Sequence record: MK250019.1
Reading direction: 5' to 3' (one strand)
DNA length: 64,000 bases
A program made the translations under genes and the position numbers. Below, in pieces: positions 2 through 62,524 of this stretch (the first letter of the stretch is position 1; the number at the start of each line of letters is the position of its first letter). The notes below the pieces were generated by a model, which did no database searches, had not been told where the DNA came from, and saw only the letters and a list, made by a program, of their open reading frames with translations.

Positions 2-3000
2 ACATTAAAAGGAGAGAAAGACAATCATATTTTTGTTAGTTATGAAACTATAAATTAGTTAATTGACTCTATAGATGATTCATTAGATGATTATGATACT
101 AGCTTAATATATATTCGTAAGGAAGTTATGAATAAACTTTCTGTTTTAGAAGATGAATAGACTAAATTATCAAATAAGGTTGATAACATCTTACCAGATA
201 TGCAACCAAAGTTTGATGAAATATATACAAAGTTAGAATCATTAGAATCAGCAGGAAAAGAATATACTGATACAAAAGTTAATGAATTAACTGAATATGT
301 TAATTCTTCTGTAATGGAAAAGATTAATAATTATGAAGGCACAATGTCTGATATGATATTAGATGCATCTTCTAAATTAGATAACATGCAGAAGGAATTT
401 GAATCAAAAGCGAAAGAAATTCTTAACAGAAGTGAAGATGTATATAATACTCTTGATGTTTCTCTTCGTAATTATGTTGATAATGAAATGTTGGGAATGC
501 AACAGTTTGTTCATTCTGAAACAACACAAGCAGTTATTGACATGAATGCAAAATATGCTGTTTTGAAAAAAGCAGTTGCATCTATAAATGCGTCAGTTAA
601 TGATGTAGATATTAAACATAACAAAAAGGAAACAGAATTAAATAGAACTATTGTTGAAACAGCAACACAATTAACAGAAGATTTATAGGTTGCTAATGTT
701 TCACTTATTAATTATATTAATCAATAGTCAGAATTATTTAATAAGAGAATCGATAAGAAGATTGATGAACTTGAATTTAATGTAAAATCTAAAAATATTG
801 ATTTAACAAATACAGTAGAAGAATATCAGCATAATATTAAAAATGATATTGCTGTATTCAATACATCTATGAGAACTTTTGTTAAATCAAGTCTTGCCAC
901 AGTTTAGACAGATGTAAATTCAAAGTATTCAGAATTAAAAACATATGTTACATCAAATGATGCATCTTTATTAAATTATGTTAATGCACTTGAAGTTGCA
1001 TAGAAGACATATATCAATAAGCATGATTCTGAAATTAAATCTTGGATTGCAACTGCTAATACTTCTTTATTTAATATTGTACGTTCAACTGATAGTAAGT
1101 TAAAGGATGATATTGATGCAATGGATTCACGTCATCAGGCAATGTATCGTTCAGTAGAATCAAGACTCGATAATCTTATTGATGATATTTCAACAGATCT
1201 TAATATCCTTGTTAATGAATATAATAAGGAAATTAAAAACTTTACACGTAAACATGTAAGCGATCTTGAAAATCAACTTAAAGTTCAAAATGTAAGTCTT
1301 GTAAATTATATTGACGATAAAGCACAGGAAGGGGTTAATGAAACTCGTTTACTCAATGCATCTCTTCGCACACAATTAAAGAATACTGTAAATTTACTTA
1401 ATACAAGTATTAACAATTCAATTCAATATACAGACGATGAAATTTCTAATTTGAAAACATATGTTGATAATGAAAATTCATCTATTATAACTTATGTTGA
1501 TAATCAAGATTCAAAAGTTAAGTTATATGCTGAATTAAAAGATAAAGAAGTAAAAAATTATATTGATGAATTAGAAGAGCAACTTAAGAAATATTCTAAT
1601 GAAGGAGATTCTTCTGTTGTTAATTATATTAAATTAACAAAAGATAATATTGAAGAGTTTGTTAAAAAACAGGATGAAGATACATTAAAGAAAGCATATA
1701 TTCATGATGATGAAATCAGAAATAATATGATTGCAGACTATAATGCATTTGTTCGTAAGCAAAAAGATATTGATGCATCTTTATTAAATTATGTTAAAAA
1801 TACAGATACTTCATTATTTAATTATATTAAGAATAGAGATGAACAAATAAAGAGATGGATTGCTATTGGTGATACGTCAATTTATAATTATTTCAAGTCT
1901 ATTAATACATCATTATTTAATTATGTAACAAAGAAAGATACCGATTTACAGAATACTATTGTAAATACAGGTACAAAGTTACAAAATGATATGGAAGTAT
2001 TCAAGACAAATGTTAATTCAAAGATTGATTCTGCGAATATTAATCTTGATAATAAGATGAATTCTTATAATACTTCAATGATGTCTTATATACAGTCTAA
2101 TGATGTTTCTATTATAAGTGCTGTTAACAGTAAAGATCATGATCTTGAAACAAAATTGAATAATGAAATTTCTAAAGTAAAAACACAATTAGAAACATAG
2201 GATTCATCAATTTTGAATTATGTATTAAATGCTGATTCATCTATTAAGAATAATATAGCTATTATTAATGACACTATTAATAATGAACTTAGAATTGATA
2301 TTAAGAAACTTAATACAAAAGTTGATGTAACAGAATCTTCTATTGTTAATTATATCAATACTAATGATCATAAATTAGGTTCTTATATTGATACAGAAAT
2401 TACTAAGGCTACAAATAATTGTAAAGCAAATGATTCATCTGTTGTTAATTTTATTAAGAAGGAAGATTCATCTATTGTTAATTATGTTAATGGTACAGTT
2501 AAGTAGGATTTACTTAATATGATTAATGATACAAATACATCAATTATTAATTATGTTGCTGCGAATTCTTCATTATTTAATTATATAACAAATAATGATA
2601 CATTACTTAAAGCTCTTATTGAAAGTAAAGACGGTTCTATTCTTAATTCATTAACATCTGCAGATGCTTCAATTATTAATTTAATAGAAAAATACAATAC
2701 AGAATTAACAAATAAAATTAATTCAAATGATTCTTCTATTAATTCAAAAGTTGATAAGTTCAATGCTTCTACATTTAGTCATTTTACATTACAAGATGCG
2801 AATATTCAAGCTAAATCAGATTTAGCAGATACATCTATTGTAAGTTATGTAGACTCACAATTTTCTGGATTTAATACAAGTATTAATCAATCAGTTTCAA
2901 ATATTAATAATAAGATTGATTCTGTAAAGAATGATCTTGAAAATACTATAGAAACAAATAATACTTCTATTGTTAATTATGTTAAAGCACATGATGCTGA

Positions 3001-6000
3001 TATTGAAAACATGATTACAACAAATAAGGAAGTTTATAACTATATTAATACACAAGATACATCTATTGTTAATTTTATTAAGAAACAAGATTCAGAACTT
3101 GATAATAAAATTGATATTGTAAACAGTAACCTTAATAATAAATTAGATACACAGAATGCAGAAATACGTCAGGAAGTTATCGATAAGGCAAATGAGGTTT
3201 ATTATACATTATCAAATAAGATAACAGATTTAAGTAATACTGTACATGATAATGATACTTCTATTCTTAATTATGTTAAAGCATCTGATACTGATTTAAA
3301 CAATAATTTATTACAGTTAGATACTAAACTTCATAATGAATTAGATAATAATAAGACAGAATTAAATAATACTATTAATTCAGCTATTACAGATTATGAA
3401 AATAAGAGAACTGATTTTGAAACTAATGTTAATAATGCTATAAGTGAATTTAAAACAGATGTTTCAACAAAATTCTCTTCATTCAATACAAAGCTTCATA
3501 ATGAAATGAATGAATTAATATCTAATGTTAATACAAGCATTAATGTTACAAATTCATCTACTATTAATTATCTTGAAAATGAAATTTCTAAAATTGATAA
3601 TAAAGTCAATAATTAGAATTCTTCATTATCAGTTGCATTTGAAAATTATAAAACAGCAACAGATACAATTCTTAATAATAAATTAGAAACAGTTAAATCA
3701 GATCTTGATAATACAATAAAAGATAAATTCACTGAAGTTGATATTACTCTTGACAAAGCAAAGACTGAATTAATTGCAACTAATGAAATATTTAAGAATG
3801 AAATTAATAATGATATTATTAATTTAAATACAGAAGTTGACAATAAATTAAATGATTTGAAATCATATGTTGATTCTGAAAATATCAGTCAGGATATTAA
3901 AAACGAAACACGTTATAATACTTTAAAGAATGATATTTCAACATTAGATAATCAAGTAAATACTCGTATTACTACACATGAGAAATTATGTGCAGCTGAT
4001 ATTGAAAATGCAAAAATTGAAATCAATAATAAGGTTAATACTGTTAATTCATCATTAGTAAGTTATATTGATAAGAATGATACTGAGATTAAACAGGAAT
4101 TTGCAAATAGATTAGCTGATTTAACAAATTATGTTAATACACAAGATGCCACATTAGATAGAAAGATTGATAAAGTTAATCATGATTTAACTGAAACAAT
4201 TACAGATGTAGATTTACGTGCAACTACCGGTATTAATAATCTTAGAACTGATATGAATTATGAGATAGATAGATTAGATAATAAGATCGATGCTACTGAA
4301 AGAAGTATTAGAACTGATTTTGAAACTGCAGATAATGCATTACGAGAAGAAATAACAAAGGTAAATCATGATATTCGTCAGGATATGAATTCTCGCGATG
4401 ATGATTTACAATAGCAAATAACTGATGTTAGCAAAGATCTTAAACAATTTGTTGTTGATTCATCTAATATGATTACAAAACATATTGCTAATGTTTCTTC
4501 TGATATTCATGATGTTATTTCTGATACATCTGCATTAATTTGGGGTTATATTGATAATACATCTGATGCAATTGTTAATTATGTTAAATTATTTGATACA
4601 TCACTTAAAAATTATTCTGATATAGAAGATAATAAATTAAAATTAAGAATTGAAAATGTTTCTTCTAAATTGATAGATGTAAGTAATGCATTAGATAAAC
4701 TCATGGGTACTGGTGATGTTACTACAGCTATAGATACATTTAAGGAAATTGAAGAATTCTTAAAAGCATACAGTAATAAAGATTCATTATCAGCATTATT
4801 AAAAACTAATTCAGATACTGATAAAGCATATGCAGATTCAATTTTAAAACGTTTTAAAGAATATATTGAGAATTATATATTAGACGGTTCTACTGATATT
4901 ATCAATAAGATATATAATACATCAAATGATATTGTTCACTTTATTTAGGATGTTTCAAATAAATTTAAGTCTTATATTGATATTCAAGACGGTAAATTAG
5001 ATGGAAAAATTACAGTATTAAGAACAGATCTTGATACTACAAATAGTAATATTACTGATTTAAAAGAATATGTTGATAATCAGGATGCAGCAATAAACAG
5101 AAAGATTACAACTTTATCAAATACAGTAGATCAAAATAAGACAGATATTAATCAGAAAGTTGATTTATTGAAAGATTATGTTAATAATGATGTTTCTAAT
5201 AAGATTGTTGCATATGTTAATAATGTTTCAAATAACATTGTTAAATATATTGATAATACATCTAATAAAATTGTTACATATGTAAATAATGTTTCTAATA
5301 AGATTGTAACTAAATTTGACACAGAAGTTGGAAGATTAGATACTCGTATTGATAATACCTCTGACTATATTGTTCATTATTTAAATGATACATCAGATGC
5401 TATTGTTGAATATATCAAAACAAGATCAAATACGCTTAACACTAAAATTGATAATGTTTCAGATTATATTGTTCATCAATTTAATGATGTTTCAGACGGT
5501 TTATATAAATTAATAACACTTAAGTATAATAATTTATCATCTTCTATTGGAGACACGATTAAGAAACATAATGAAGATATTTAGAATATTCAACGATATG
5601 TTAATCAATAGATTGCAGATACAACTGATACATTAAGACAAGAAATTAAAGTTGTATAGGATAATGTAACTGAAGTAGATAGAAAATATAATGAAAAGTT
5701 TGTTACTTTATATAATAAAGATCTTAAAGATGTTAATTCTTCTATCAGTAAGTTAAGACAAGATTTCGTTCAGGCTGATTATGATTCTAGTACATAGATT
5801 TATAATTATCTTAATGGTGACTTTAAAAATAGCATTACTAATAATATAAATAGTGTTAATAAAAAATTAACAGATTATATTAGAGATAATAATAAAGCTG
5901 TATCAGATCTTAATACTAAGGTTGACAATACTAAGACAGAAATAATGACTCATGTTAATGCAAGTTATATAGAAGTTACAGGTAAAATCAATTCTGTTAA

Positions 6001-7891
6001 TACAACATTAGCAAAAGATATTAATACAAAATATAATACATTAAATGATAAAATTACTTCTGTTAATAATACATTGACAGAAAAGATAAATACAAATTAT
6101 AATACATTAAATGATAGAATTACTTCTGTTAATAATACATTAACAAAGAGTATTGAAACAACAAATACTACTTTACAAGGTAATATTGATTCTGTTAATA
6201 ATAATCTTATTAAACGTATTGATTCATATAATTCATCATTAGCAAATTATACTGATGTTGAATCTACTAAATTATCAACTGCAATTAATAATGTAAATTC
6301 CACATTAACTTAGAAAATAACATCAGAAATTTCTACTGTAAATAGTTCTATTAAGGAGCTTAAAACATATGTAGATACTACATATTGGCAAAAGATTACA
6401 AATCATGTTGATACAAAAACATCTGAGTTATCACAACAGATTAAAACATTAGAAACAACAGTTAATAATAAGTTAAACGATAATTTTGTAAGTAATGATG
6501 ACCTTAATTCATTTGAATCAAAAATTAAACGTTATGTAGACGATCAGGATAAGTTGTATGATGGTTCTGTAAATGATTTATCAACAAGATTATCAACTAC
6601 TAATACAAATCTTAAAAATCTTAAGGATCAATTTACAGCATTAACATCAGAAAACGTAGACGGTACTATTAATACATACAAGGAAGTAGAAAAATTCTTA
6701 AAGAATATTAATGATACAACAACATTAGTTTAGTTATTAGCAACTAATAAACAAGAAGCTATTGATGCTGCTAATCAATATACAAATACAAGTATTAATA
6801 ACTTTAAGAATAATTATATTACACCATAGTTTAATTCATATAATAGTAAATTTGATGCTATTGACGGAAGTGTAAATAATATTGAATCTAAAGTTACAAA
6901 ATTAACATAGCAATCAAATACTTATTTAACTGCTATCACTGCTGCAACAACAACAGCATTAGGTGGTATTAAATTAGGTTATGTTGATTCTGAAAAGAAT
7001 GTTGCCGTAAGACTTTCGGAACAGAAAGCATATGTTACTCTTACAGATACTGCTATTAAGAAAGCACTTGGTTTCACACCAGCTGCACAAAATGCAAATG
7101 GAGAAGCATATACATTAACTGTTGCAAGTGATATTAAATTAGGTGGCATTAAAACAGGATATACTCCAACAGGTGCAAATGCAAGTAAGCAATTACCCGT
7201 TTCTGTTGATACAAACGGTGCCGCTTATGTAACACTTACAAATTCAGCTGTAACTGGAGCATATTCATATACATTACCAACTGCAAATCAATCTGAACTT
7301 GGTGGTATTAAAACAGGTTATAGAGATAATGGTAATAACATACATGTAAAGGTTGATGGTACAGGAAATGCATATGTAACACTTACTGAAACAGCAGTTA
7401 AAGGTGGATATAGTTATACATTACCAACTGCAGGTACTTCTACACTTGGTGGTATTTGTACAGGATTTAGTAATACTGGTTCAAAAGTAAAAGTTGATAT
7501 GAGTAGTAATAATGCTTATGTCGAGATTACAAAAGCTGCAATTACAAATGCGTTAGGTTATACTCCATCTCAACCAGTAACAGATGGAAATGGAAATCCA
7601 GTAGCTTATGTATTACCAACTGCAACTGGAAGTGTATTAGGTGGTATTAAAACCGGCTATACTTTATCAAAGAGTGGTACAACATTAAATGTACCTGTTA
7701 AAGTTGATGAACATGGTAATGCATATGTAAGTATAACATTAGCTGATTTAGAAGGTATAGGTACAATAACAACAAATAATATTGCTGGAAATGTTACTAC
7801 TATAATATAGTCTGATGAAGCATGGGTTACAAAACAATATTATGAAGGATTAACAGATAAAGGTAGTAAGACTTATTACATTTATGAATAA
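2..7891 (+). CDS. Giant coiled-coil virion fibre protein, at least 2,629 aa, 5'-truncated by the window edge, TAG=Gln
   Basis: All nine + ORF fragments from 200 to 7810 share one frame. The gaps I translated are interrupted only by TAG (about 20 in total), and the frame ends at TAA 7889-7891. It has more than 25 [DN]-[TS]-S-[ILV]-x-N-Y-[VI] and YVD coiled-coil motifs, and five C-terminal repeats of the type YTLPxAxxxxLGGIKTGY...VxVDxxGNAYVxLT. Confidence 0.85.
6032..6141 (+). repeat. 66-bp-period tandem duplication inside the fibre gene (22-aa unit)
   Basis: tataatacattaaatgata(a/g)aattacttctgttaataatacatt occurs at 6032 and 6098 with one mismatch. Confidence 0.9.
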
Positions 7892-9586: not shown

Positions 9587-10909
9587 TTATTGTTCAATGA
9601 TCTTATACCAATATAAATTATAATTTGATTTCTGTTGTTCAACTTTATTTGTAAATCCTTTTACAGCTAATGCATAAGATGCTTTAATAGTCAATTCAAA
9701 TATAGGAGTCTTATAAGATGATAAATTTGCTATGTTTTCTGATTCTATATTTGTAATATTAGTATCTTGAGTAATTATATGTGTTTCTTTTTGGTTTAAT
9801 TTTTTCCCTTCATCTGTATTATATAATATAGGAATATTCTTAGATGAAAAATTGTCATGATTTGAACCGGTAACAACATCTATTATTTGCTGTTTATCTG
9901 AATTATTATCATTTTCTTCATCTTTAACAGTTATCTAAACATTATAGAAAGGAACTATAAAAACAGAATCTGCATATGATGCTAGATCGTCTTCTTTAAT
10001 TTCTTGTCCATATATATTTGATATAAGAGATGTAAGTTGTTTTTTAAAGTCTTCTGTTAATTTTATATCAAAAATAGATTCCCATTTAATTAAACAACCT
10101 AATTTCTAATATAACATTATATCACATAATTTTAATGGTTGCTAATCATTTATAACATATTGATCTGTTTTTGATTTTAATTTGTCATCATTTATAAACA
10201 ATGTAGGCATATATTTATTATTGAAATAAACCTTTCTACAATAATCCAAATTTCCACTAGAGATAACAATATATAATTTACCAGACAGCAACTCCTAAAC
10301 AGTCGGCACATATGTTCCATCATATTCTACCGTTTCTGTTCTATCTTCTATTTCTTTATTTTTCTGTTCTTTATCATAATTAATATATTCATATCCTATT
10401 GGCATTATAGAATAACTGTTTTCACTACTATTATCAAAAAAATATAATCCTTTATAGTCATCCTATGCTATATATGAATCATTTAACGCCTTTAAATATT
10501 CATATCCATATTCTACAAAAATATCTTCTAATGATGCTTCATTTGCATTAGTTGCGAATACAGGATTAAGTACACATCCAGCAAACTGCATTGCATTATA
10601 TGTTTTACTTTCATTATTTGGATCTTTATATTTTTGAAAATACGTATAATCATAATAATTGTCATTTAATTCATTATTATCAAAATATGTTTCATTTTCT
10701 TTAACAATATATTCTTCTGCATTTATATCATGTCTATATGTACCATAATTTCGATAAAAATCATTATTTACTTGATGTTCATCTGATGCAATATCAGCAA
10801 CTTTTTTATTTTCAATATCATATGATAATCTATCATAACGTGAAAAATCAAATATATTAGTATATGTCCTTAATATTTTCTCATATTCATTATTAACAAT
10901 ATCTGCCAT
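9587..10909 (-). CDS. Hypothetical protein, 440 aa, 5 in-frame TAG, probably late/virion
   Basis: ORF 10463-10909 reads through TAGs at 10463, 10295, 10142, 10106 and 9935 (all checked in frame) to TAA 9587. Confidence 0.8.
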
Positions 10910-11007: not shown

Positions 11008-12897
11008 ATGGAAACAACAAAAGATAGTAATAAACTTACAATATATAAAGGTAAATCAGAAGAATATGCATTTATTCCTTTAGATGTTTCTGAAAAAACT
11101 TATTATAACTTTACTAATGGTATTATTTATAATGATGGTAGTACATATATTAAAAATATAACGGCTGATACATCACTATATAATTTTATTAAAGCTAAAA
11201 TCATGGATGCTTCTGCAATTAGAGATCCTGATACTATAAGTATAACTAATGGAACATATAATATAAACGGATATTTAAGTAATAATATGTTAACACATAA
11301 CATAAAATTATATTATATTGAAAATTTTAAATATACATTGGATACATCACAATATACTAAAGGCGATGATGAAAATACAAACGTAGTAAATAGAGGAAAT
11401 ACTTATATGTTTACTATTATACCTAAATTAACAAAAGACGTCTCTGTACTTGAAGCATCTCAAAAGCCCGTTGAACCAGGAGGAGGATCTGGTGCTGGTG
11501 GAGGTGATACAAGTTCTGGTGAAACAGAAGATCCAAATAAAAAATATGATATTGTATTTAGTGTTGATGGAAATCAAACATTATCATTAACACGAGTAGG
11601 CACAACAAATAATTATAAATTAGGTGGAACTTTAGTTATTAAATATAATCAATCTGATAATTCTATTAAAGGCGATGTTGGAACAATTAGTACTATTACA
11701 AATAATAATAGTATTTATACATTTGTAATATATTTAGGTTCAGTTTCACAACCTTGTGTGATATAGAGAATTGATGGATATAATACAACATCAAAGTTAT
11801 GGGAAGGTAAAATTAATATAAATTTAGATGAAATGATACCTCATATTACATATACGTTATTAAGTCCCGGTAGTACAATAAGTTGTGAGTTACGTATGAA
11901 CATATCCAAAGATGTACCTATTTTTTCAAAGCATGGTTCTCGATTAAATTCATATATTGTAGAGAATGGGAATAGTTATGGTAAGGATAATTTTGGTTTA
12001 TATAAGTTTAAGTTAAACACTATTTCTGTTCCAAAAGCAGGTACAGCAAAAGCATATTTCTTATAGTCTTTAATAGGATAGTATGGAACCTGGGACCAAA
12101 CTGCATTAAATGTAATGAAAGTTAATAATATGTTTGGTTCGAGAACTAGTGGTATTTTTATTATTGTATCAGATGGCAAATATCTAAATTACGCTAATAT
12201 TTCTAGTAGTATTACGTCAAGCGTACCAAATTATTTAGTTGGTGATTTTAAATTAGCATCAACTGGTCATAATAGTATATTCACATCTCCGCTTAATAAT
12301 AATAATACCACTGTTGTGCTAGATGGTCCTCCGATATTTTTGTATGATGAAAGTAATAAGCAAACAAAAATAGACAAAACAAATGGTTATGAAACTGATA
12401 ATAATATATTTGATGAAACATATTTTAAACATAAGTCAGGAAATAAATTCCCTGTTCCTGCTAGTACAGAACGTAAAAAAAATATTATTAACTTAAATAA
12501 CTATAAATATCTTATGTATGAAAAGAGTTCTTCAAAACCGAATCATTATTGTGGTAAACAACTTACTAATGCAGATTTAAGTGCATATGAAGGAAAAACA
12601 TTTAATGTTGTATATGAAGTATGGACATATAAAATAAATTCAGATTTTTAGCCTTCTATAAATACACCCATAAAAAATAAAGATGGTGAACATATATTAA
12701 CATCTGTAAGTCCATCATATAATTTAAACTAGAAAATTGATAGAATTGATTGGGAAACAGGAGGAGGTGGAGGAACAACCATCAAACCAGTAAATACTAC
12801 ATATACTGCAACAGTAACACAGTATAAATTATATAGTTTTAAATTATCAAAAACAGATTCAACAACAGGTGTATATGAATATACATTTACAGATTAA
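11008..12897 (+). CDS. Multidomain beta-rich protein with Gly linkers, 629 aa, TAG=Gln, probably virion
   Basis: ORFs 11008, 11833 and 12115 share a frame and are separated only by TAG; the gene ends at TAA 12895. Contains linkers GGGSGAGGG and GGGGG. Confidence 0.8.
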
Positions 12898-12944: not shown

Positions 12945-14792
12945 TTATGAAAATATTATATATTTAATTTTTATAGGAATTTCATTAGGATTATACACTA
13001 ATAAACTCTATAATAAGTTTTTAACTTTTAATTGTTTATCATCATCTTTACCAATTATCATATATCCATCTCCAATTCTTAACCATAAATCATTTGATGA
13101 TAAGTATTCCATATACTTATATAAACCTATTACACATTCTACTGACGTATCATCATGTGAATCAACAAATTTTACATTTGTTTTATTAGGATTATTTTCC
13201 CATAAATCATTATCTTCTGAATTTCTATTTGCATCTATATACATATCAGGATCATGATATTTTATAGGCTCATCATCAAAAACTCTTTTTTCTTGTGTTG
13301 CAGGTAATCTATAAAACTCATCATTTATATTCCAATCTGTGTCATATGCAGGTATATATAAATTATCAAAACTGTTTGTAAAACCATCATTTGATGAAAT
13401 ATCATTTAATGGTAAATTATCATAATCTTCTATATAAGCACGTTTCTCTTCTGGTATAAGTGCATTTATCTATACAGTAGCTAATGCTTTTTCAAATAAT
13501 GTTGCTTTCTTTTTTGATATAATATTACCTTCATAGTAATTACTTAATCTTTCAATTGATACAGGTACACATATTTCCAACTAATCTGCAACATGATTTA
13601 CCCATAATACATTTGAGTCATATTCTTCATCATTTGGCCAATTAGGAATTAATACAATACCACGCATTGCTCCATTAGGATATTTTACATTTCCTATACG
13701 TCTGTTTAAATCTTCATAACAATTAGATGGTCCAACCGAATTCATCATTTTAAATATAAAATCTTTAATAGCATCTAATATTTTAACTATATCATATATA
13801 TTATACAATGATAAAGGTTTTGTAAAATATTTCTAATAAATCTAAGGATATTTTTGTATTATAATATCATTGAATTTCTTTGAAAATATTAAAACACCAT
13901 TCTATTCAAAACATGGTAGAAAGAATCTTTTGATAACATCTATTTCATAAACAAATGTATTAAAATCATCTGTTATAGTATCACTCAATTTTAAAAACTC
14001 TCTGTAAATATCACAATTAATTTTATAATTATTAAGTTTAGAATTATCTGTTTTATCACCTATCAATCTAGGTTTATATTTTTCCAATAAACTTATAATG
14101 AAATCTTTTGTAATAACAGGTTCAACAAATGGAGAATCTTCAAATTCACCAATATCTCCTTTATTATTTTCATCATTTCTTAATATAGGAATAATCTTAA
14201 CATTCCTTACTATAAAATCATATCCTTCTTCCGTACTTTGAAAGTTTATATAGTCTATTTGCTTGTTAGAACTCTCTGTATCGTCATAACTTTTAATAGA
14301 TATAGAAACAGGTACCTTCAATTTATTTAATTGATTCTGGACCAAATTTACAAATGTTCCGTATGTTTCTCTCACTGTTTCACTCTCTACATGAACATTA
14401 CAAATTTTATTATTTTGTTTATATAAAATATCAAATCCTATATTACAATAACTTTCATAATCTTCTATAGATGAAATAATATCGCTTATTAAGAAAAACT
14501 GTGATTTATATGTTTCTCCGTATTCATTACCCTGTAAAAGATATGCGGAATGTGGTTGAAGTATTTTAGTTTCTACTGTATACTAAGTTATACCGGCAGC
14601 ATGTATAGTCGATAAATCAATAGATGCAAGAATATTTCCATTTGAATCTGTTATTTGTCCTTCTGAACCAGATATATCAAATGATGTATCCTTTTCATTT
14701 ATTGTTGATGTACATGCATAACCAGAATTTGCTACATTATTATTTTTTGAATATAATTGATAAAATAAATTTTTATTCTTTGTTGTTGCCAT
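12945..14792 (-). CDS. Hypothetical protein, 615 aa, TAG=Gln, probably structural
   Basis: Four - ORF fragments (13008, 13581, 13902, 14583) share a frame; the first TAA after the last fragment is at 12945. Confidence 0.78.
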
Positions 14793-44153: not shown

Positions 44154-44183
44154 TAATACTATATTAATATTTAAAATATTTAT

Positions 44184-45329: not shown

Positions 45330-45365
45330 ATTTAATTAATACTATTTACTGATATTCATATTTAT

Positions 45366-45401: not shown

Positions 45402-45423
45402 TCTTGAAGATTTTACATTATCT

Positions 45424-45876: not shown

Positions 45877-45879
45877 ATT

Positions 45880-45936
45880 TTAATAAATTTTAGTAAAATT
45901 ATTATAAAAATCTTATGCATATCTTACAAAATATGG
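45880..45936 (-). pseudogene. Relic copy of the 3' end of gene 46415-46948
   Basis: Closely matches 46415-46471; PYFVRHAEDFYDNFTKIY becomes PYFVRYA*DFYNNFTKIY. Confidence 0.7.
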
Positions 45937-45965
45937 AAAAAACCTTTAAAGACGTTGTATTATCT

Positions 45966-46412: not shown

Positions 46413-46414
46413 AA

Positions 46415-46948: not shown

Positions 46949-46952
46949 ATTA

Positions 46953-47633: not shown

Positions 47634-47682
47634 TTTTAAATTTATTTTTTAACTTATATTTTCTTATATATGTATGAATATA

Positions 47683-47720
47683 AAAAGTCCTGATTAACAT
47701 TCGAATTAATCAGGACTTTT
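47683..47720. terminator. Intrinsic terminator
   Basis: 15-bp stem aaaagtcctgattaa/ttaatcaggactttt downstream of the prohead protease gene. Confidence 0.9.
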
Positions 47721-47753
47721 ATATATATTTAACATAATTTTATTTAATATTAA

Positions 47754-49508: not shown

Positions 49509-49720
49509 ATAAACAAAATAATTCTTATTTTTATTATTTATTCATTCTATATATTTATTAAAAATGCAATTTAAAATAAATATTTAAATATGATATAACT
49601 ATAATGAATAAAAATATAAAACATTTATTAGAATATATTGTTAACGAAGAAAAAATATATATAAAAGAGAACAGAAATAGTTAAATTCTTCAACTAAATA
49701 AAAAGTAAATGGATAACTTA

Positions 49721-50332
49721 TCATCGAGATAAGTTATCCATTTTTTGTTTACAATTATCAAATATGTTTTTAAGTTTTGTACAAAATGAATCAATATCAT
49801 CAGGTGAATATCCATTAAAGGTAATTTCCCATAAAACTTCAGCAATAATTGTATTTTTATTGAAATTCTTTAAGGTATCTGGGTGAATATTCAAATACAA
49901 AACATTACACCAATCCATAAGATCTATTGCATAACTAACATCTCTTTCTTTAATAAAACCAGATACATTGATATATTCATCATGATTTCCTAAATATTCA
50001 TCAATTACTGTATTTAAACATATGTACATATTAAATGATGGTTTAATAGGCTTCATATTAGTTAAAATTTGAAATGCTTGTTTATAACCATCAATATTTT
50101 TCTTTTCATCATGATGATGTACATACATTGCATTCATAATATCATTAAATGATGAATTCATTATTAATTCCTTAAAAGAAATAGTACGATCATTATTTCT
50201 TTTTGGACATGTATTTAATGTATTCAATGGTCTAATGTTATTTAGAGTCGGTTGAATTAAGTTGTATTTACAACCATGATGAGAACAATTCTTACACCAA
50301 ATTTTCCCAATTTTACAATAATTCTTACTCAT
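49721..50332 (-). CDS. Hypothetical protein (possibly DUF6557-like)
   Basis: YAIDLMDW...IIAEVLWEITFNG; the family call is from memory. Confidence 0.55.
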   Translation of the reverse strand: MSKNYCKIGKIWCKNCSHHGCKYNLIQPTLNNIRPLNTLNTCPKRNNDRTISFKELIMNSSFNDIMNAMYVHHHDEKKNIDGYKQAFQILTNMKPIKPSFNMYICLNTVIDEYLGNHDEYINVSGFIKERDVSYAIDLMDWCNVLYLNIHPDTLKNFNKNTIIAEVLWEITFNGYSPDDIDSFCTKLKNIFDNCKQKMDNLSR

Positions 50333-50581: not shown

Positions 50582-51967
50582 TTAATGCTTATTTATTTTT
50601 ATTTTATTTGAAATTGTTATCATTGCATTTTTCCCTTTTATAGATAACACACGTTTAGTCTGATTATTTAATACTTTAGGCGCTGTATATTCATCAAATG
50701 ATTTTATACTTTTACCGTCATCTGTTATATATTCTTGTGGTAAAAGTACGTAAATAGTATCAATATATATACTATTCTTATAAATAATGTAAGATATTAT
50801 TATTCCTAAATCATTTTCTGCACGTATAGGATCATTTATTGAATTTGATATATTTTTCTTCTATATAATTTTTATTTGTGTTTTATATGTCTAATTATCT
50901 AACGTAATAGTACCATCATATATTCTCTAACCATTTTTTGCTTGCTCTATATTATCCTGTCCATATAATTTAGCATTTATATCATTTAAAGACTTACTTA
51001 TACATTTTATAATAGCATCTTCTACCATTAGTCCAGCATACTAACCTAAATGTTTATATAATTTATATGATTCACTATTATCTACATATGGTATATCACA
51101 TGATAATTGTATATTTTTAATAAGTGGTATGCTGTCTTTTTCCATTTTTTGCATTAAATTAAATAATACATCTGATAATTTTGCATATTGTTCAGCATTA
51201 ACATCGTTAGTAATAGTAGTTTCATTGATAACACCCTCATATATAAGTTTAATATCATTACTTGTTAATTTATGATAAGATTCTTTAATCGATATAGGTT
51301 CAACTCTACTAGAAAAATCTTCGATACATTGTTTTGTATCAAATTCTATATTTCTACCAAGTCCTCTTAATTTATTAAGGTCTTTTTCCTTATCTAATAT
51401 ACCATCTTTAACCAATTGTTTAAATGCATACATATCATCTGATATAAAAGTTTTACCACCTTTCTTCCATTCATCTGTATATGTTTCAGATTTATGATCA
51501 TATTTAGGATCACAATTACCAAATAAACGTTTTACGTCTTTTCTGTATGCATTTCCTTTTTCTGGTATATAACATCTGAATTGTTTACCATCATAATATA
51601 CCATAATACATATAGGACATTCCCAGTCACCACCAGCATACATAATAATATATGGACATCCTTTTACTGTTCTAAGACTACCACTGATTTCAAAATTTTC
51701 CCAATCTGGTTTAATATCTTTAAAGTCTTTATGAATAGTAGATTTATCATCATAATATGATTGTCTGACTGCACGTGGTAAAGTTGCAATAATTTTATTT
51801 GATGCATTTGTATTGTTTATTTTATCAACTGTATATTCGTCATCTTTACAAACATTTAATATAAATGCTTTAGCTTTTTCAACAAACTAAGTTTCACTTA
51901 GTTTTGCAATTTTTCTACCACCTTTTCTTAATTTTATATTGTTATATAATGAATAATATTTACTCAT
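50582..51967 (-). CDS. Hypothetical protein, 461 aa, 5 in-frame TAG
   Basis: ORF 51041-51643 extends upstream to ATG 51967 and downstream to TAA 50582, crossing only TAG. Contains internal IKES/IYEG/INET motifs. Confidence 0.8.
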
Positions 51968-51969: not shown

Positions 51970-53355
51970 TTAATTTTGTTTAATTTTATTAATCTCATTA
52001 TTAATGTTTAACAAGAATTTCTTAAATTCATTGATATTCCATCCTGTATATGAATTAAACTCTTCATATTTAATATCTAACGATAATAATTCTCGTTTAA
52101 TATAATATTCTATATTAGTATTATCTACAATTTCTTTTATATCGTATAAGTCATTAACAACTTTATTTTTTATAAGAATTTTCATTGGTGGAAATCCGTC
52201 TCCTTTGTTAACATTATCTTCTGAAACTTCTGAACATATATCATATAATAATTCAAATTCACTGTATGTTAATACATCTATTGTTAATAAATCTTCATTT
52301 TGATATGTATCTGGATCCTATCCTTCTAATGTGATAATATCTTCTAAATCCATAAAATAATCATCATCTGTTAAATGATTAATTGCATCAATATCGATGT
52401 TTACTCTATATATTTTAGGATAATAATGGTTATCCCCACCATCACCATATTCAAATTCACCTACATCAAACTGTTCTGTACTTCTATCAAATCCAAGTTT
52501 TAAGAAATCCCATTCATCCAATACTCTTGCAGATTTATGTTCTTTCTATGTTTTTGTACCTGTATCATACAGATCAAAATAACCGTTTTTAAATGAACGT
52601 AAATCAATTAATGATAAATCCTAATTAAATGATGTACAACCATATAGTAAATAACTTATATCCATATTTTTTGTTATATTCCATTTCTATATAGGCTAAT
52701 TGAATTTTCTACAATTATAAAACATATATGATAAATTTTCAGCACTAGATATATCCCAATTACTTATATCCTAATTAAATGATGAACACCCATAAAACAT
52801 AGAATCAAATCTTGTAACTTTACTTACATTCCAATTACTAATATTGCTGTTGAACGTTGAACATTCATAAAACATATTTACCATTGATGTTACTTTAGAT
52901 GTATCCCATTTACTTAAATCACAAATATCTTTACATCCGTTAAATGTACCAACCATGGATGTTACATGTGATGTATCCCAATCTGAAACATCCCAAAATA
53001 TATACTGTCTGTTAAATGTACCCACATTAAATAATTGGTCTAACATTGTAACATTAGAAATATCAAGCCAATTTAAATTAAAAGCATCAACTTTATCTTT
53101 ATATAATTGTTGTTTTATATCTGCTATTATATGAACCAATTCACTAAAATCTTTTACTTTATATTTAAATGCATCCTAACATACTAATTCTAAATCATCA
53201 TCAGATACAACCATACCTTTTAATAATTGTTCATGTATTTTTTTAGCATCATCTTCTAATAAATCATTAGTCATACTTATGTTATCATCATTAAATAATT
53301 CATCATCGTCATCATCAAATAACGATTCTAATAATTTCTTTATTTCTTTAATCAT
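51970..53355 (-). CDS. BspA-like / DUF285 leucine-rich-repeat protein, 461 aa, TAG=Gln
   Basis: Three fragments share one frame. Repeats W[DN]xSxVTxMxxMFxxCxxFN(TAG=Q)[DP]; acidic leader MIKEIKKLLESLFDDDDE. Confidence 0.88.
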
Positions 53356-53382: not shown

Positions 53383-53709
53383 TTACCAATGATAACCTAA
53401 TTCTGCACCCATTGCAGCTAATACAAGTCTCGATGTTAGTAAATTTCCTAATGTACCTTTTTCATCTATACCTAAACATTTACATATAGCTTTCATAATA
53501 CTCTACCCAATTGTTGATGAAACTGCACTTCCCAATAATGCTGTAAATAAACCTTCATCTACTATATCATCTAAAGGAACACCTTCTTTTTTTGCAATTT
53601 CATTTGCTTCAACAATATAATCATATACTTTTTTACTATCCATTATTTGCTTAGGTGTATAATTACTTAAATCAATACCTTCAAATAAATTATTATATTT
53701 TTCACTCAT
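53383..53709 (-). CDS. Small hydrophobic protein, 108 aa, 1 in-frame TAG
   Basis: Reads through TAG 53503 to TAA 53383. Confidence 0.75.
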
Positions 53710-53845: not shown

Positions 53846-55096
53846 ATGAAAAAAACAACAAAAACTGTAAATAGCATGAGAAGTCAGAAAGCACTTTATA
53901 ATGCTATTATGGAATCAGTAACTCCTCAGATTGCTAGATTAGTAAAAGAAGCGGAGGAAGCAGATGATGAAGACAAAGCATCTGATGATGTAAAGGATGC
54001 AGAGAAAAATGAATCAAATGATGTTGATGAAGCAGCACTTAATGAACTTTTTGGTTTTGGTTCATCTGTACAGAAACCAGAGAAAGCATTATCTCTTGAA
54101 AATTCTGATGATGAAAATGCAGATTTATTTATTGCATGGTGTGCATACTATATGTCTAAATGTAGTAATGACGCAAAGAAAGGAATGGATGCATTTTTTA
54201 AAGCTTCTGGTGATGTTATTAAGAAAGCACCTATGATGATTGTAAAAGGTATTCTTAAGTTAATGTCAGGTGCAATTAAAGGTTCTGTATTTGGTGTAAG
54301 TACAGTTGCAGCTGTTGTTCTTGGTAGTATCTCTATGTTGGTACGTTTAATAGTTTCTGGTGTAGAAAAAGCAAAGGAAGCACTTGCACAATTATATAAA
54401 ACAATTAGTCAAGGTATTACTACATTCTATAAGAATTTTACTGGTGGTGCAGAGAAGATGGCATAGGATTCATCAGATAAATTAACTGTATGGCTTGGTG
54501 TTATTTCTGGTGCACTTATGGCATGTGCAAATAAGGTTCAAGGTGCAGTTGAAACATTAGGTAATTTCTTTAAACAAGTTCTTGCAGATGCAAAGGCAAA
54601 GAAAGATGGAGCTGTTCTTCTTGTGAAGACATGGTTACAGGCGAAATCAGAAGCAGTTAAATCATGGATTACTGAAACCGGTGGTGAGATTCGTAAGACT
54701 GTTATTGAAGCATGGAATGCAATGGATAAGAAAGTTCGTAATGCATATGATAAAGTTGCAAAGAAACTTGAAGACTGGATGAATGATATTAAGGAATTAG
54801 TTCAGGAAATCGGTACAAAAATTTCTGATGCTGCAGATAAAGCAAAGGATGTTGTTATTGATAAGAAAGATAAGGCACTTGTATGGGGTATTCAGAAAGG
54901 TGTTAAGGGACTTTCAAAGAATTATACAGAAGATCAAGTTGTAGCACTTGTTCGTAAATGTTATAATGAGTCTGTTGTACCTAATACAAGAACCGGTAAT
55001 ATTGTTATCAATGAAGCATATTTACATGCAAAAGGTTCTAGAGCACGTGTACTTTATGAAAGAAAACAAGCACGTCGTGGAAAACTTTTAAAATGA
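53846..55096 (+). CDS. Amphipathic helical protein, 416 aa, 1 in-frame TAG (possible internal virion / ejection protein)
   Basis: ORFs 53846 and 54518 are in frame and separated by a single TAG; ends at TGA. Central hydrophobic segment. Confidence 0.75.
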
Positions 55097-56549: not shown

Positions 56550-56945
56550 TTATTCTGTTAATTCATAATATGTCAATACTTTACAATATCCACAATCCCA
56601 TGAATCATAATAAAATCCATTTATACATGCTACTACATGTCCTCTTAAATTTAATAAAAAATGACCATTATTATGTTGTTTAACAAATTCACTTACTGTT
56701 AAACGATGTTGTCCTTTATGCAGTTTTCCAAATGAACGTTTAATATAACCATGATTCTTTAACCAAAGTTCTATAATTTTCCATTCATTTGGCATTCGTT
56801 TCTTCTTTCTACCTAAATCACAAAGTTCATCATAACATGTTATCCAATCTCTATCAGTCAATTTCATCATTGCACGTATTGCACAATCATCTGCATTCTT
56901 CTTTTGTGATTCAAATTTTATATAACGGTCATTCATAATAAACAA
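56550..56945 (-). CDS. Hypothetical protein with a papain-like Cys/His/Asp motif pattern
   Basis: DDCAIRA...GHVVACI.G.YYDSWD. Confidence 0.55.
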   Translation of the reverse strand: MFIMNDRYIKFESQKKNADDCAIRAMMKLTDRDWITCYDELCDLGRKKKRMPNEWKIIELWLKNHGYIKRSFGKLHKGQHRLTVSEFVKQHNNGHFLLNLRGHVVACINGFYYDSWDCGYCKVLTYYELTE

Positions 56946-57024
56946 TATAAATTTATATAATAATATATTAAACTATTTCTTAAAACGATAAAATCTGGAA
57001 ACACACCATTCCCAGATTTTACTA

Positions 57025-57978
57025 TTACATATCATATTCATGTTTCTTATCTAATTCAGAATCGATTACTTTATAAAAGTCATATATATATTGATTAAAA
57101 TAATCATTAAAGAAATTATATATTTTCTTTGCAGTTATCTTATCATTTCTTGTTAATTTATAATCGAACCTTTTTATCTTTTCAATATAATCTTTATCAA
57201 TTCCAAAATCTCTTACATTCAATTTTGTTAAGAAATAACCTAAATAAAATACAGGTCTTATTTCGTTAGGATCTTCATCTATAAAATGGAATAAAAAGAA
57301 ATAAAATAAATTATAATAATTAGAATCAATAAAATTATTAATTAATGTACATACACGTTTAAATCCATGATTACCGTAACATATTAAATCAATCTGCTGT
57401 TGTGTTAACGCATTTACTTTATTTTGTATACATTCAATTCTATTCAATTTTTCTGATGGAGATAATAATGATAACATTCTTGTAGCAAATAAAAAATCTA
57501 CAGATGATATATCAATATCATTTTTCAAATAATGTACAAGTGTTATATTATCTTTTATATATACTCTATGTGTTAAACAGAATTCTAAATAAAATAATTG
57601 AGTTCTTAGATAATGTTTATATTTGTTAATATCTGTAGATACATAATGTACATTTATAAAAATATACATACCATCATCATTTAATTTAATATCTACATAT
57701 TGATAATCATTTTCATCATAATAATGAACATATATAGGAACAGTATCACCATTTTGTGTCATACAACCATATATGGCATACATACTTTCTGAATTCAATT
57801 CATATTTAATTGATAACTCAAATTCATGTTCAAAATTTTCTTCTATTGCAATATCAATAGCTTCATCTGCAATTTTTGTATGAATTAAAGAGCATTTTGA
57901 ATAAAATTCTTTTAATGAATTATATCTATATGTAGGAATTATTTCTCGTATTTTATTTACAATACATTTATTAAACAT
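57025..57978 (-). CDS. Hypothetical protein (317 aa)
   Basis: Clean ORF. Confidence 0.7.
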   Translation of the reverse strand: MFNKCIVNKIREIIPTYRYNSLKEFYSKCSLIHTKIADEAIDIAIEENFEHEFELSIKYELNSESMYAIYGCMTQNGDTVPIYVHYYDENDYQYVDIKLNDDGMYIFINVHYVSTDINKYKHYLRTQLFYLEFCLTHRVYIKDNITLVHYLKNDIDISSVDFLFATRMLSLLSPSEKLNRIECIQNKVNALTQQQIDLICYGNHGFKRVCTLINNFIDSNYYNLFYFFLFHFIDEDPNEIRPVFYLGYFLTKLNVRDFGIDKDYIEKIKRFDYKLTRNDKITAKKIYNFFNDYFNQYIYDFYKVIDSELDKKHEYDM

Positions 57979-59954: not shown

Positions 59955-60968
59955 TTATGCTTGTTTTTTATTTAATGCATAAAAATAATTCTTTAATTCA
60001 GAAAATGAAAAGAATTCTAAATAATTTAAACCATGTTTTTCTGCTATTTCTCTTTTCATAATATCTCTAGTTGTCCAAACATTAATAGCTGAAATATAAT
60101 AATCTTTTTCTTTCGATCTCTTTTTCCATAAATTTAATTTCTTAATGTCGTCGGGATTATTTTTATCAAAACCATGTTTACCATGTGTCCAATGAAAATT
60201 ACATTCAATATATAAATCATTATCTGCAATATAAAAATCACAAGCAAAAGGATATTCTTCTGATTTATATTGTCTTTTAATATCAGTATATATTGTTTTT
60301 AAAAGTTCATATACTTTATCTTCTTCCTTTGAACATGTATGTGTTTTATGTTTCGTTTTAGATTCATGTATTTTGTCTATTGTTGATTGTAATTGTGTAG
60401 TNNNNNNNNNNNNNNNNNNNNNNNNNNNNNNNNCTTTTCTTTTTTCTTTTATAACTTCACATTTACCAACATTATCAACACCATACTTTTCTAGTACAGT
60501 TTCTTTACGTTTTTCCTTTACATAGTCACTGGCTAATGCCATTTCAGTACCATAACGTTCTAAATTCGTGGCTTTAATTTTATCCCATACTTTCTATGAT
60601 TTTGCAGGATTATCTACACCATAACGTTCAATATTTGTTTTCTTTATCTTTTCTTTAACACTTTCTAATTGAAATGGATTTGCAACTCCATATTTTTTAA
60701 TCATAGATTGCTTTTTCAGACCATATATACATTTAGAATTACCACAACTTTTGTGATATTTATAACCGTCACGTTTACATGGTTTTCCACAAATATGACA
60801 TCTTGGTACATCATTAGTATCATTTAATATACATAACAGTTTATCGATAATATCCATATCAGATTTATCGATAAACTGTGTATTTAAATATTCAATAATA
60901 TTAACAGGTATCTTATTTTTATTTAATGAATGCTCCTTATAATACTATTTTATATATTCATTATTCAT
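59955..60968 (-). CDS. Putative homing endonuclease: Cys-rich Zn finger, KYGVxNP repeats and a C-terminal PD-(D/E)XK (Vsr/DUF559-like) nuclease; 337 aa, 2 in-frame TAG
   Basis: Joins 60594-60857 and 59955-60542 via TAG 60594 and extends to ATG 60968. CHICGKPC...CGNSKC, [KR]YGVxN repeats, CDFYI..DLYIECNFHWTHG. Contains an N-run at 60402-60433. Confidence 0.78.
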
Positions 60969-60976: not shown

Positions 60977-62524
60977 TTATGCACTTTGTTTTCTATGTTC
61001 AAGAATATGCTTTAATTCTTCATATTCTGTATTAGCTATTTTCTTATCCATTTTTGCTGCTTTTCGCAATGCAAAATAATGTGTAAGAATAGCAGGAACC
61101 ACAGCATTTGGATCTTTTTTATAAACAGCACCCGAACATGTTTTAATTTCATCAGATTTTGGTATATAATTCTCATCTTTAAATAAAAATGATTCTGGAG
61201 AAATCTGGAACTGCCTCATGATACTCGGATATAGGGAAGCGAAATCCAGTCCACCTATGTATTTGAAGATACCGGGTCTAGTAGGCCATACAAAAGCGCC
61301 CTGATAATCTCCATCTGAATTGTCTGTTTTTTTATAAGATTTCTCTGGTATTACTTTATAATTTGGATACACAAAGTTACACATTACGACATGTGTAGGT
61401 TGAATTGTTGAGAATGCAACATTTAATTCAAGTCTGAGTTCACATGCGAGCATATACCAGATTTCAGCAGTTTTTAGGAATTTATCGATATGTTCTACCA
61501 ATATTGTATCGATGCAATTATAAAATACATATTCTTTGAAATGTTCTTCATAGAATTCTTTGAATCCCCAAGGGTGATTAACTTTTTTGATGCCTAATGC
61601 TTTTTCTGCAACGAAGTCAAGTGTATTATTTTCTTTAGGTTGAATTGTCATATCCCATGTTTTATATACGAGTAAGTAGTCATATATAATTTTGTGCATT
61701 GGGACTTTAACATTAATTGTTTTACCTCCAGCGCGTGGTGTAATTTTAAAGTTTGTAAATGTTCTGGTAGGAGATATTCTTTCAATATCAATATTATTGA
61801 TTTTGCATCTATTATAGATATATAACCAGTCGAATCCAAGGAAATTCCAACCAGACATTGCAGTAATTGGTGTGATGAAGTCTATGAAGTCTTCAAGCAT
61901 TTCTCTTTCAGTAGGGAAATATCTGAATTCGAATTTATATCCTTTAGTTATATGGGTACCATTATTTTTTTCTGAATATTGTTCTATTTGTTCTTGAACC
62001 CAAATTTTTTCTTCTTCTGTTAGATTTTTCCTGGACCAAATAATTGTTTGTGGAAATTTGGTCATTGATATTGTATTGATTCTTGTAGATGCTTCTTCTG
62101 GATCAGGAAAACCATCTTCAGAAACTTCTGTTTCAATATCGCACCACCATGTTGGCGGAATATTCATTTCAAATAATGGGTCAACTGCTTTTCCGAATGA
62201 ATTTAGAATTTCATTTATACGAAGTTCTGGAAGTTTATCTACAGGATTTCTTCTAACCCATTTATTATCATATGATTTCCATTGATGCATAACAGGAGTT
62301 CCATCTGGATTGAACTTATATTGTTTTGTTGCAAAATCATATTCTTGAAATGGTTTATCTGCATTTGCTTTATTTGTATATTTCCATTCGAACATTGATT
62401 CTTTAGGAACAGGATATTGTAAAAATTTAACATCTCCTTTTTTATCTACATATGAAACAAGTAATTTCTTAGTAGGTGTTCCATCTGGTAATATAAAATC
62501 TATCTATTCTTTATTAATAATCAT
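60977..62524 (-). CDS. Family B DNA polymerase, N-terminal subunit only (exonuclease and motif A), 515 aa, TAG at codon 7
   Basis: ExoI CDIETE, ExoII GWNFLGFD, ExoIII YNCID, motif A DFASLYPSIM. Ends at TAA shortly after LRKAAK, without motif B or C. Confidence 0.9.

What the first reader, a model, noticed from the sequence alone, without database searches (positions are those of the whole stretch)
2..62524. TAG is reassigned to Gln, shown by three independent conserved motifs
Long frames are broken only by TAG, and I found no gene that needs TAG as its stop. TAG sits at family-conserved Gln positions: RNase H SADADIR-Q-L (9033), T5orf172 RLK-Q-L-Q-TGN (about 35867-35875) and DUF285 FN-Q in three repeats (52771, about 52696, 52621). 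This matches code 15 as known for Lak megaphages and some crAss-like phages. At least 15 genes are split, truncated or missing in the supplied track.
Basis: partly seen in the sequence, partly recalled or inferred. Interest (0 to 1): 0.75.

Follow-up and report, generated by a model that had tools for sequence, protein, structure and literature searches.

The report
Lak megaphage reads TAG as glutamine

Summary
Observation confirmed, interpretation supported, not new. The window is 100% identical to Prevotella phage Lak-A2 (MK250019.1, record position = window position + 62000). Reading TAG as sense raises coding density from 70.7% to 90.1%. Reading TGA as sense gives 69.4% and TAA as sense 77.8%. 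Seventeen ORFs carry 97 in-frame TAGs and no in-frame TAA or TGA. All 71 ORFs end in TAA (65) or TGA (6).

All three motif coordinates are exact. The RNase H/FEN TAG at 9033-9035 aligns to Gln in 51 of 51 homologues and in T4 RNase H (DGDFTQL). The T5orf172 TAG at 35873-35875 aligns to Gln in 30 of 30 homologues; three homologue genes were read, and there it is CAA or CAG. In DUF285, Gln is only the commonest residue at the FN-x position, not a conserved one.

Against Lak-B and Lak-C orthologues, Gln codons, mostly CAA, are by far the commonest partners of TAG. Elsewhere the genome encodes two tRNA-CUA genes closest to the phage's own tRNA-Gln. It also encodes a TAG-free RF2, and no RF1, GlnRS or PylS.

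The N runs keep the record's length. Two are intergenic and one lies in frame inside a homing endonuclease gene. Devoto 2019 and Crisci 2021 reported all of the main points.

The parts
128..7891 (+). ORF of 2587 aa with 19 in-frame TAG (open from base 2). Weak tape-measure-like PHROG matches.
   Evidence: open orthologues in Lak-A1, Lak-B3 and Lak-C1
8304..9503 (-). T4 RNase H / FEN-type 5'-3' exonuclease, 399 aa, 2 TAG. The TAG at 9033-9035 sits at the invariant Gln of D-x-D-x-x-Q-L.
9587..10909 (-). ORF of 440 aa with 5 TAG, function unknown
11008..12897 (+). ORF of 629 aa with 5 TAG, function unknown
12945..14792 (-). ORF of 615 aa with 7 TAG, function unknown
14884..21048 (-). ORF of 2054 aa with 29 in-frame TAG and no in-frame TAA or TGA
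21071..21436 (-). ORF of 121 aa with 3 TAG. The last TAG is 7 codons before the TAA.
23781..24062 (+). ORF of 93 aa with 3 TAG
24105..50332 (-). 26-kb block of about 37 minus-strand genes compatible with the standard code. It holds 147 CAA/CAG and 1 TAG, and that TAG is at codon 4 of an extended ORF, probably upstream of the real start at 27291. The block includes a ClpP-like protease, a polynucleotide kinase, a phosphohydrolase and a prohead-protease-like gene.
   Evidence: Fisher p = 2e-14
35777..36100 (+). T5orf172 / GIY-YIG-like gene of 107 aa. All five Gln-type codons are TAG, with no CAA or CAG. It is the only plus-strand gene inside the TAG-free block. The TAG at 35873-35875 is the invariant Gln of LQTGN.
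38619..38889 (.). Two N runs (38619-38648 and 38859-38889) in two copies of an intergenic direct repeat spaced 240 nt apart. No gene crosses them.
   Evidence: offset argument
50582..51967 (-). Neighbouring ORF of the same length as the DUF285 protein, 461 aa, 5 TAG; no PHROG match, kinship not tested
51970..53355 (-). DUF285 (PF03382) repeat protein, 461 aa, 7 TAG. Three of them follow FN, at 52771, 52696 and 52621.
53383..53709 (-). ORF of 108 aa with 1 TAG
53846..55096 (+). ORF of 416 aa with 1 TAG joining two code-11 fragments. Weak tape-measure-like matches.
56550..57041 (-). ORF of 163 aa (phrog_3754) with 1 TAG
59955..60968 (-). Homing endonuclease (phrog_3339), 337 aa, 2 TAG. It holds the N run 60402-60433, which is in frame.
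60977..62524 (-). N-terminal piece of a family B DNA polymerase, 515 aa, with a TAG at codon 7 inside a stretch that the Lak-B match also covers

Best explanation
The window is part of Prevotella megaphage Lak-A2, which uses genetic code 15: TAG is a sense codon for glutamine, and TAA and TGA are the only terminators.

Shown here:
- TAG lies in frame in 17 genes and never ends one.
- It exchanges with CAA and CAG in orthologues.
- It sits at invariant Gln columns of two unrelated families.
- The phage genome, outside the window, encodes two tRNAs with anticodon CUA whose nearest relatives among its own tRNAs are tRNA-Gln.
- The phage also encodes release factor 2, which does not recognise UAG, in a TAG-free gene. 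It has no RF1.

Inferred:
- The CUA tRNAs are charged with Gln by the host's GlnRS, because the phage has neither GlnRS nor PylS.
- They outcompete host RF1 at UAG.
- Because TAG is absent from a 26-kb block and concentrated in other modules, TAG-bearing genes can be made in full length only after the phage's suppressor tRNAs have accumulated. This is the 'code switch' timing model published by Borges et al.
For: Identity with MK250019.1.

Density 70.7% against 90.1%, with TGA-sense and TAA-sense controls.

In-frame stop census (0 TAA, 0 TGA against 19 and 29 TAG).

Gln at TAG columns: exonuclease 51 of 51 and T4 RNase H. T5orf172 30 of 30, with CAA/CAG in table-11 homologues.

Lak-B and Lak-C codon partners of TAG, and the likelihood ranking with Gln first by 91 and 30 log units.

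tRNA-CUA x2 at record 143.9-144.9 kb, nearest to tRNA-Gln(CUG/UUG) at 56-59% identity, one of them (73 nt) sharing U1, G2, G3, G10 and A73 with those tRNA-Gln.

RF2 at 406 bits (cut-off 370) with no in-frame stop; the best RF1-model match is the same gene and falls below cut-off.

No GlnRS or PylS.

TAG-free block, Fisher p = 2e-14.

Literature: Devoto 2019 (PMC6784885) reports code 15, the CTA tRNA, RF2 and TAG-free regions for A1 and A2. Crisci 2021 (PMC8346664) reports Gln at 75-85% of aligned TAG positions.
Against: There is no protein-level evidence for Lak. [quoted passage not shown]

At variable columns TAG aligns with many residues: Lys, Glu, Asn and Ser.

The second tRNA-CUA is almost as close to tRNA-Lys (55%) as to tRNA-Gln (56%).

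Charging by host GlnRS and the timing model are inference. The TAG-free block holds two protease genes of the head-maturation type, while replication genes carry TAG. A simple rule of 'late structural genes use TAG' therefore does not describe this window.
Confidence: 0.95

Rival explanations
1. TAG is a conditional codon. Early in infection host RF1 still stops at it. Only after the phage's tRNA-CUA and RF2 are expressed is it read as Gln, so recoding serves as a timer for TAG-bearing genes. This refines the best explanation rather than replacing it.
For: The distribution is strongly bimodal: 96 TAG against 286 CAA/CAG in some genes, and 1 against 147 in the 26-kb block. RF2 has no in-frame TAG. 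The model is published for recoded phages including Lak (bioRxiv 10.1101/2021.08.26.457843).
Against: No expression timing data were available here. In this window TAG-bearing genes include RNase H, the DNA polymerase piece and homing endonucleases, while the TAG-free block includes protease genes of the head-maturation type. Devoto 2019 saw transcripts from both kinds of region in all samples.
Confidence: 0.5
2. TAG is a sense codon for an amino acid other than Gln, for example pyrrolysine (the label ARAGORN gives to CUA tRNAs), Glu, Lys, Leu or Tyr.
For: ARAGORN names the two CUA tRNAs 'tRNA-Pyl'. At variable columns Lys, Glu, Asn and Ser are frequent opposite TAG.
Against: Two invariant columns are Gln in 51 of 51 and 30 of 30 homologues. 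The likelihood puts Gln ahead of Glu by 91 log units. There is no PylS. The CUA tRNAs resemble the phage's tRNA-Gln.
Confidence: 0.02
3. The TAG-interrupted frames are pseudogenes, assembly errors or chance ORFs, and TAG is an ordinary stop.
For: None beyond the fact that code 11 gives fragments.
Against: ORFs of 2587 and 2054 codons have no TAA or TGA (1e-75 and 1e-60 by composition). The same ORFs are open in Lak-A1, Lak-B3 and Lak-C1 at 64-98% protein identity, with 24, 57 and 67 TAGs kept in place. HMM matches run through TAG sites.
Confidence: 0.01
4. The phage's tRNA with anticodon UUA also takes part, either by reading UAG through wobble or by causing some read-through of UAA.
For: One tRNA-UUA lies at record 211338-211409. 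Crisci 2021 found such a tRNA in 51 of 51 Lak genomes.
Against: 65 of 71 ORFs end at TAA. Making TAA sense gives only 77.8% density and 29 strand switches. Crisci 2021 found no other sign of TAA recoding.
Confidence: 0.1

Closest known systems
Prevotella phage Lak-A2 itself (MK250019.1; Devoto et al. 2019, Nat Microbiol, PMC6784885)
   Same: The sequence is identical. That paper reports for A1 and A2 a coding density below 70% under code 11, TAG read as Gln (code 15), a CTA suppressor tRNA, RF2, and regions longer than 5 kb without TAG. I reproduced all of these.
   Different: Nothing in kind. Added here are codon-level counts for this window, the Gln column in T4 RNase H, and a check that homologue genes use CAA or CAG at the T5orf172 column.
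Expanded Lak clade (Crisci et al. 2021, iScience, PMC8346664)
   Same: Gln is the aligned residue at 75-85% of TAG positions. There are 1-2 tRNA-CUA copies, and a universal tRNA-UUA without evidence of TAA recoding. This matches.
   Different: My Lak-B and Lak-C comparison gives lower Gln shares (42-46% of non-identical partners), because it counts all aligned positions, variable ones included.
TAG-recoded crAss-like phages (Peters et al. 2022, PMC9523058; Borges et al. preprint 10.1101/2021.08.26.457843)
   Same: They use the same code 15, carry suppressor tRNAs, and have standard-code and recoded modules.
   Different: In crAss-like phages the reassignment is proven by peptides; for Lak it is not. 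In crAss-like phages the recoded genes form one structural and lysis unit. In Lak they are scattered and include replication genes (this window).

Membership tests
Genetic code 15 (TAG = Gln) phage | In-frame TAG, and only TAG, interrupts otherwise long conserved frames; density is restored when TAG is sense | tested here: met
   Density 70.7% rises to 90.1%; the TGA-sense and TAA-sense controls do not restore it. The two giant ORFs have 0 TAA and 0 TGA against 19 and 29 TAG.
Genetic code 15 (TAG = Gln) phage | TAG columns align with Gln in homologues that use the standard code | tested here: met
   51 of 51 (exonuclease), 30 of 30 (T5orf172 LQTGN), and T4 RNase H. Homologue genes carry CAA or CAG there. 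The DUF285 sites show only a plurality of Gln.
Genetic code 15 (TAG = Gln) phage | TAG is not used as a terminator | tested here: met
   71 of 71 ORFs end in TAA or TGA, and 54 of them end independently of the code chosen. One 7-codon tail is ambiguous.
Genetic code 15 (TAG = Gln) phage | Suppressor tRNA with anticodon CUA | tested here: met
   None in the window. Two in the genome at record 143.9-144.9 kb.
Genetic code 15 (TAG = Gln) phage | Release-factor set fitting the code (RF2 present, RF1 absent in the phage) | tested here: met
   RF2 scores 406 bits, over cut-off, with no in-frame stop. The RF1 model hits the same gene below cut-off.
Genetic code 15 (TAG = Gln) phage | Peptides with Gln at TAG positions | not testable with these tools
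   No proteomic data were at hand. Published only for crAss-like phages.
Lak megaphages (proposed 'Grandevirales', 'Lakviridae') | Sequence identity to a Lak genome | tested here: met
   100% over window 1-21500 and 40000-60000 to MK250019.1. Taxonomy from PMC11165621.
T4 RNase H / FEN 5'-3' exonuclease (ORF 8304-9503) | Acidic metal-site motifs, including D-x-D-x-x-Q-L | tested here: met
   phrog_107 at 6e-22. A profile match to 1TFR at 7e-19 aligns SADADIR-TAG-L with SSDGDFTQL. D11, E125, D127, D128, D152 and D154 are invariant.
T5orf172 (PF10544) (ORF 35777-36100) | YKIG-T ... LQTGN core | tested here: met
   Eight PHROG matches. Homologues carry PF10544 and PF13455. Y16, K17, I18, G19 and T21 are invariant.
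DUF285 (PF03382) (ORF 51970-53355) | Tandem repeats of about 25 residues with an F-N-x ... W-d-v-S core | tested here: met
   PF03382 is recorded on near-identical proteins. tblastn matches the '26-residue repeat' proteins of standard-code phages.

The most novel reading that the evidence does not exclude
TAG in Lak may be more than a uniformly reassigned codon. It may act as a gate that keeps particular genes silent until the phage's tRNA-CUA is present, and this gate may cover selfish nucleases and replication genes as well as virion genes.

In this window the lone T5orf172 nuclease-like gene writes all five of its Gln codons as TAG, although it sits inside a 26-kb TAG-free block. A Lak-like relative has CAA at three of those sites and TAG at one. 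The homing endonuclease beside the split DNA polymerase also carries TAG. No experiment on Lak has yet tested either the reassignment or its timing.
Probability: 0.15. Interest if true: 0.45.

Novelty: already known. Interest (0 to 1): 0.12.

Why it matters
For annotation it matters a great deal. Under code 11 about a fifth of this window is lost (70.7% against 90.1% coding density), and the giant virion-type genes, RNase H, the DNA polymerase piece and the DUF285 proteins are shattered, so the track should be recomputed with code 15.

As biology it adds nothing new. The reassignment, the suppressor tRNA, RF2 and the TAG-free regions were published for this genome in 2019 and extended in 2021. 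What remains open is direct peptide proof in Lak and the purpose of the patchy TAG use.

Tried and rejected
- No whole genome is held for the window. I reached the record through a locus instead.
- ARAGORN found no tRNA in the window, and Rfam at gathering threshold found nothing in it.
- Single-sequence PDB searches with the exonuclease and with the DUF285 part found nothing. A profile of homologues was needed.
- The word-index search with the DUF285 region listed only Lak orthologues of about 95-98% identity. Some at least of these collections read TAG as Gln, so I did not use the orthologues as evidence. I used standard-code phage homologues instead.
- For the same reason I checked the T5orf172 homologues at the DNA level. 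The 64% homologue is Lak-like and needs TAG = Q, while two distant ones translate by table 11.
- One call failed on a frame slip of mine and was corrected.
- GlnRS and PylS searches in the phage genome were blank.
- PHROG annotation left most TAG-free genes without a function. I therefore could not test an 'early versus late' labelling of the two kinds of module.
- I did not use the reads tools, the structure tools or the complex tool. Nothing in the question needed them.
Full report
**What the window is.** The window has 25% G+C and three N runs. A tblastn search with its DNA polymerase piece and two megablast searches place it in Prevotella phage Lak-A2, MK250019.1, a 541,299-bp circular genome assembled from a human stool metagenome in Bangladesh. 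Window 1-21500 matches record 62001-83500, and window 40000-60000 matches record 102000-122000, both at 100%. Window 60980-62524 matches record 122980-124524. Lak-A1 is 98%, Lak-C1 93% and Lak-B 79-80% identical over the parts that align.

**The N runs, tested first.** The offset of 62000 is the same before, between and after the N runs. Each run therefore replaces as many letters as the record holds at that place, and the frames on both sides are continuous. I did not read those letters in any copy.

The runs at 38619-38648 and 38859-38889 sit in the intergenic stretch 38497-38967. They lie at the same place in two copies of a direct repeat spaced 240 nt apart, and no ORF crosses them.

The run at 60402-60433 sits inside ORF 59955-60968 on the minus strand. 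One continuous match to a homing-endonuclease family (phrog_3339, residues 6-257) runs across it, so the frame is kept.

**The observation.** With TAG read as sense, 71 non-overlapping ATG-ORFs of at least 60 aa cover 90.1% of the window. Code 11 gives 70.7%. As controls, TGA as sense gives 69.4% and TAA as sense gives 77.8%, the latter with 29 strand switches, a sign of spurious frames in A+T-rich DNA. In 1-21500 the density rises from 53% to 97%.

Seventeen ORFs hold 97 in-frame TAGs. The 2587-codon ORF has 0 TAA, 19 TAG and 0 TGA in frame, while its other frames hold 105 and 327 TAA. The 2054-codon ORF has 0/29/0. By base composition the absence of TAA and TGA has a probability of 1e-75 and 1e-60.

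All 71 ORFs end in TAA (65) or TGA (6). For the 54 ORFs without any TAG this does not depend on the code assumed.

**Which residue TAG encodes.** I translated TAG as X so that the query carried no bias.

*Exonuclease.* ORF 8304-9503 matches phrog_107. An exhaustive HMMER search gave 730 relatives. In an alignment with 51 of them (23-51% identity), the column of TAG-157 is Gln in 51 of 51. TAG-28 lies in a variable, gapped column. A profile of that alignment finds T4 RNase H (1TFR, E = 7e-19) and aligns SADADIR-TAG-L with SSDGDFTQL.

*T5orf172.* For ORF 35777-36100, TAG-33 is Gln in 30 of 30 homologues (LQTGN). The other four TAGs lie in variable columns where Gln is among the common residues. 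Because databases may have translated Lak relatives with code 15 already, I checked the DNA. The 64% homologue is indeed Lak-like and needs TAG = Q. Two distant homologues translate by table 11 and carry CAA and CAG at that column. The Lak-like relative has CAA at three of the window's five TAG sites.

*DUF285.* Here the claim is weaker. In five standard-code phages (Aeromonas D6, Sphingomonas PAU, Klebsiella N1M2, Synechococcus ACG-2014f, Shewanella SXP01) the residue after F/L-N is Gln in about a third of repeats, with Gly and Ser next. At the three aligned columns Gln is the commonest residue (7 of 22, 11 of 21, 5 of 16) but is not conserved.

*Lak orthologues.* As an independent test I aligned the eight genes of 1-21500 codon by codon with their orthologues in Lak-B3, Lak-C1 and Lak-A1. 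Opposite TAG, apart from TAG itself, stand Gln codons in 37 of 88 cases (Lak-B) and 11 of 24 cases (Lak-C). Most are CAA, which is two base changes away from TAG. Next come Lys and Glu (10 each). With substitution frequencies taken from the same alignments, Gln is the best reading by 91 and 30 log-likelihood units.

**The machinery.** The window has no tRNA. The Lak-A2 record has 33 tRNA matches. ARAGORN finds two tRNAs with anticodon CUA at record 143.9-144.9 kb, about 18-19 kb past the window's end. It also finds one with anticodon UUA at record 211338-211409.

Among the phage's own tRNAs, the nearest relatives of the CUA tRNAs are tRNA-Gln(CUG) and tRNA-Gln(UUG), at 56-59% identity. The 73-nt CUA tRNA shares U1, G2, G3, G10 and A73 with them. 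For the second CUA tRNA, tRNA-Lys is almost as near.

The record encodes RF2 (406 bits, cut-off 370) in a frame of 382 codons without any stop. It has no RF1, since the RF1 model only hits the same gene below its cut-off. It has no GlnRS and no PylS. Charging by the host's GlnRS is therefore an inference, not a result.

**Distribution of TAG.** TAG makes up 96 of 382 Gln-type codons in 34 genes, but 1 of 148 in the 37 minus-strand genes of 24105-50332 (Fisher p = 2e-14). That one TAG is at codon 4 of an ORF that has a good ATG 18 codons further on.

The TAG-free block holds a ClpP-like protease, a polynucleotide kinase, a phosphohydrolase and a prohead-protease-like gene. Most of its genes have no PHROG match.

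TAG-bearing genes include the two giant ORFs, RNase H, the DNA polymerase piece, a homing endonuclease and the DUF285 protein with its equal-length neighbour at 50582-51967.

**What is known.** Devoto et al. 2019 (PMC6784885) report the following for Lak-A1 and Lak-A2: coding density below 70% under code 11, TAG probably read as Gln (code 15, confirmed with FACIL), large regions without TAG, a CTA suppressor tRNA and RF2. Crisci et al. 2021 (PMC8346664) aligned TAG positions and found Gln in 75-85% of cases. They also found 1-2 CUA tRNAs in 38 of 51 genomes, and a UUA tRNA in all 51 without evidence of TAA recoding.

Borges et al. (bioRxiv 10.1101/2021.08.26.457843) propose the code-switch timing model. 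They note that in Lak the recoded modules are scattered and include replication genes. Peptide proof of code 15 exists for two crAss-like phages only (PMC9523058). [quoted passage not shown]

**Verdict.** One of the three motifs (DUF285) and the first of the two T5orf172 sites are weaker than stated. The finding is already known for this exact genome. Its practical value is that the annotation track must be redone with code 15.

Noticed in passing
window 60977-62524 (-) and 59955-60968 (-); record MK250019.1 345517-345759 (+) and 346772-347575 (+): The family B DNA polymerase is in pieces. The window holds profile positions 113-503, ending after motif A, and a homing endonuclease follows directly. 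Positions 497-569 and 580-840 lie more than 220 kb away on the other strand, about 1 kb apart from each other. The terms 'DNA polymerase' and 'homing endonuclease' do not occur in the main text of Devoto 2019, nor 'DNA polymerase' in that of the 2024 taxonomy paper.
   Followed up: partly
window 35777-36100 (+): The T5orf172 gene writes all five of its Gln-type codons as TAG, with no CAA or CAG. It is the only plus-strand gene inside the 26-kb TAG-free minus-strand block. A Lak-like relative (64% identity, same neighbours) has CAA at three of these sites, TAG at one and CGT at one.
   Followed up: partly
record MK250019.1 211338-211409 (-), outside the window: A tRNA with anticodon UUA, cognate to the stop codon TAA, although TAA ends 65 of 71 ORFs here. 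Its nearest relative among the phage tRNAs is tRNA-Lys(UUU) at 64%. Its presence in all Lak genomes is published, and its role is unexplained.
   Followed up: partly
window 38497-38967: A+T-rich intergenic stretch of 470 nt with two copies of a direct repeat spaced 240 nt apart. Each copy carries one of the masked N runs at the same relative place. Other stretches without an ORF of 60 aa or more lie at 30514-31522 and 36413-37966, and Rfam finds nothing in them. Devoto 2019 mentions large, highly expressed intergenic regions.
   Followed up: partly
window 21500-46000: This part aligns poorly or not at all with Lak-A1, although the flanks are 98% identical. Lak-A1 matches only from window 45938 onwards, and Lak-C1 matches 40000-50519. 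The TAG-free block therefore seems to be a variable or exchanged region among close Lak genomes.
   Followed up: no
window 27401-28090 (-) and 47754-49508 (-): Two different protease genes of the head-maturation type (a ClpP-like one, phrog_94, and phrog_207) lie in the TAG-free block. The published rule is that structural genes lie mostly in TAG-rich regions.
   Followed up: no
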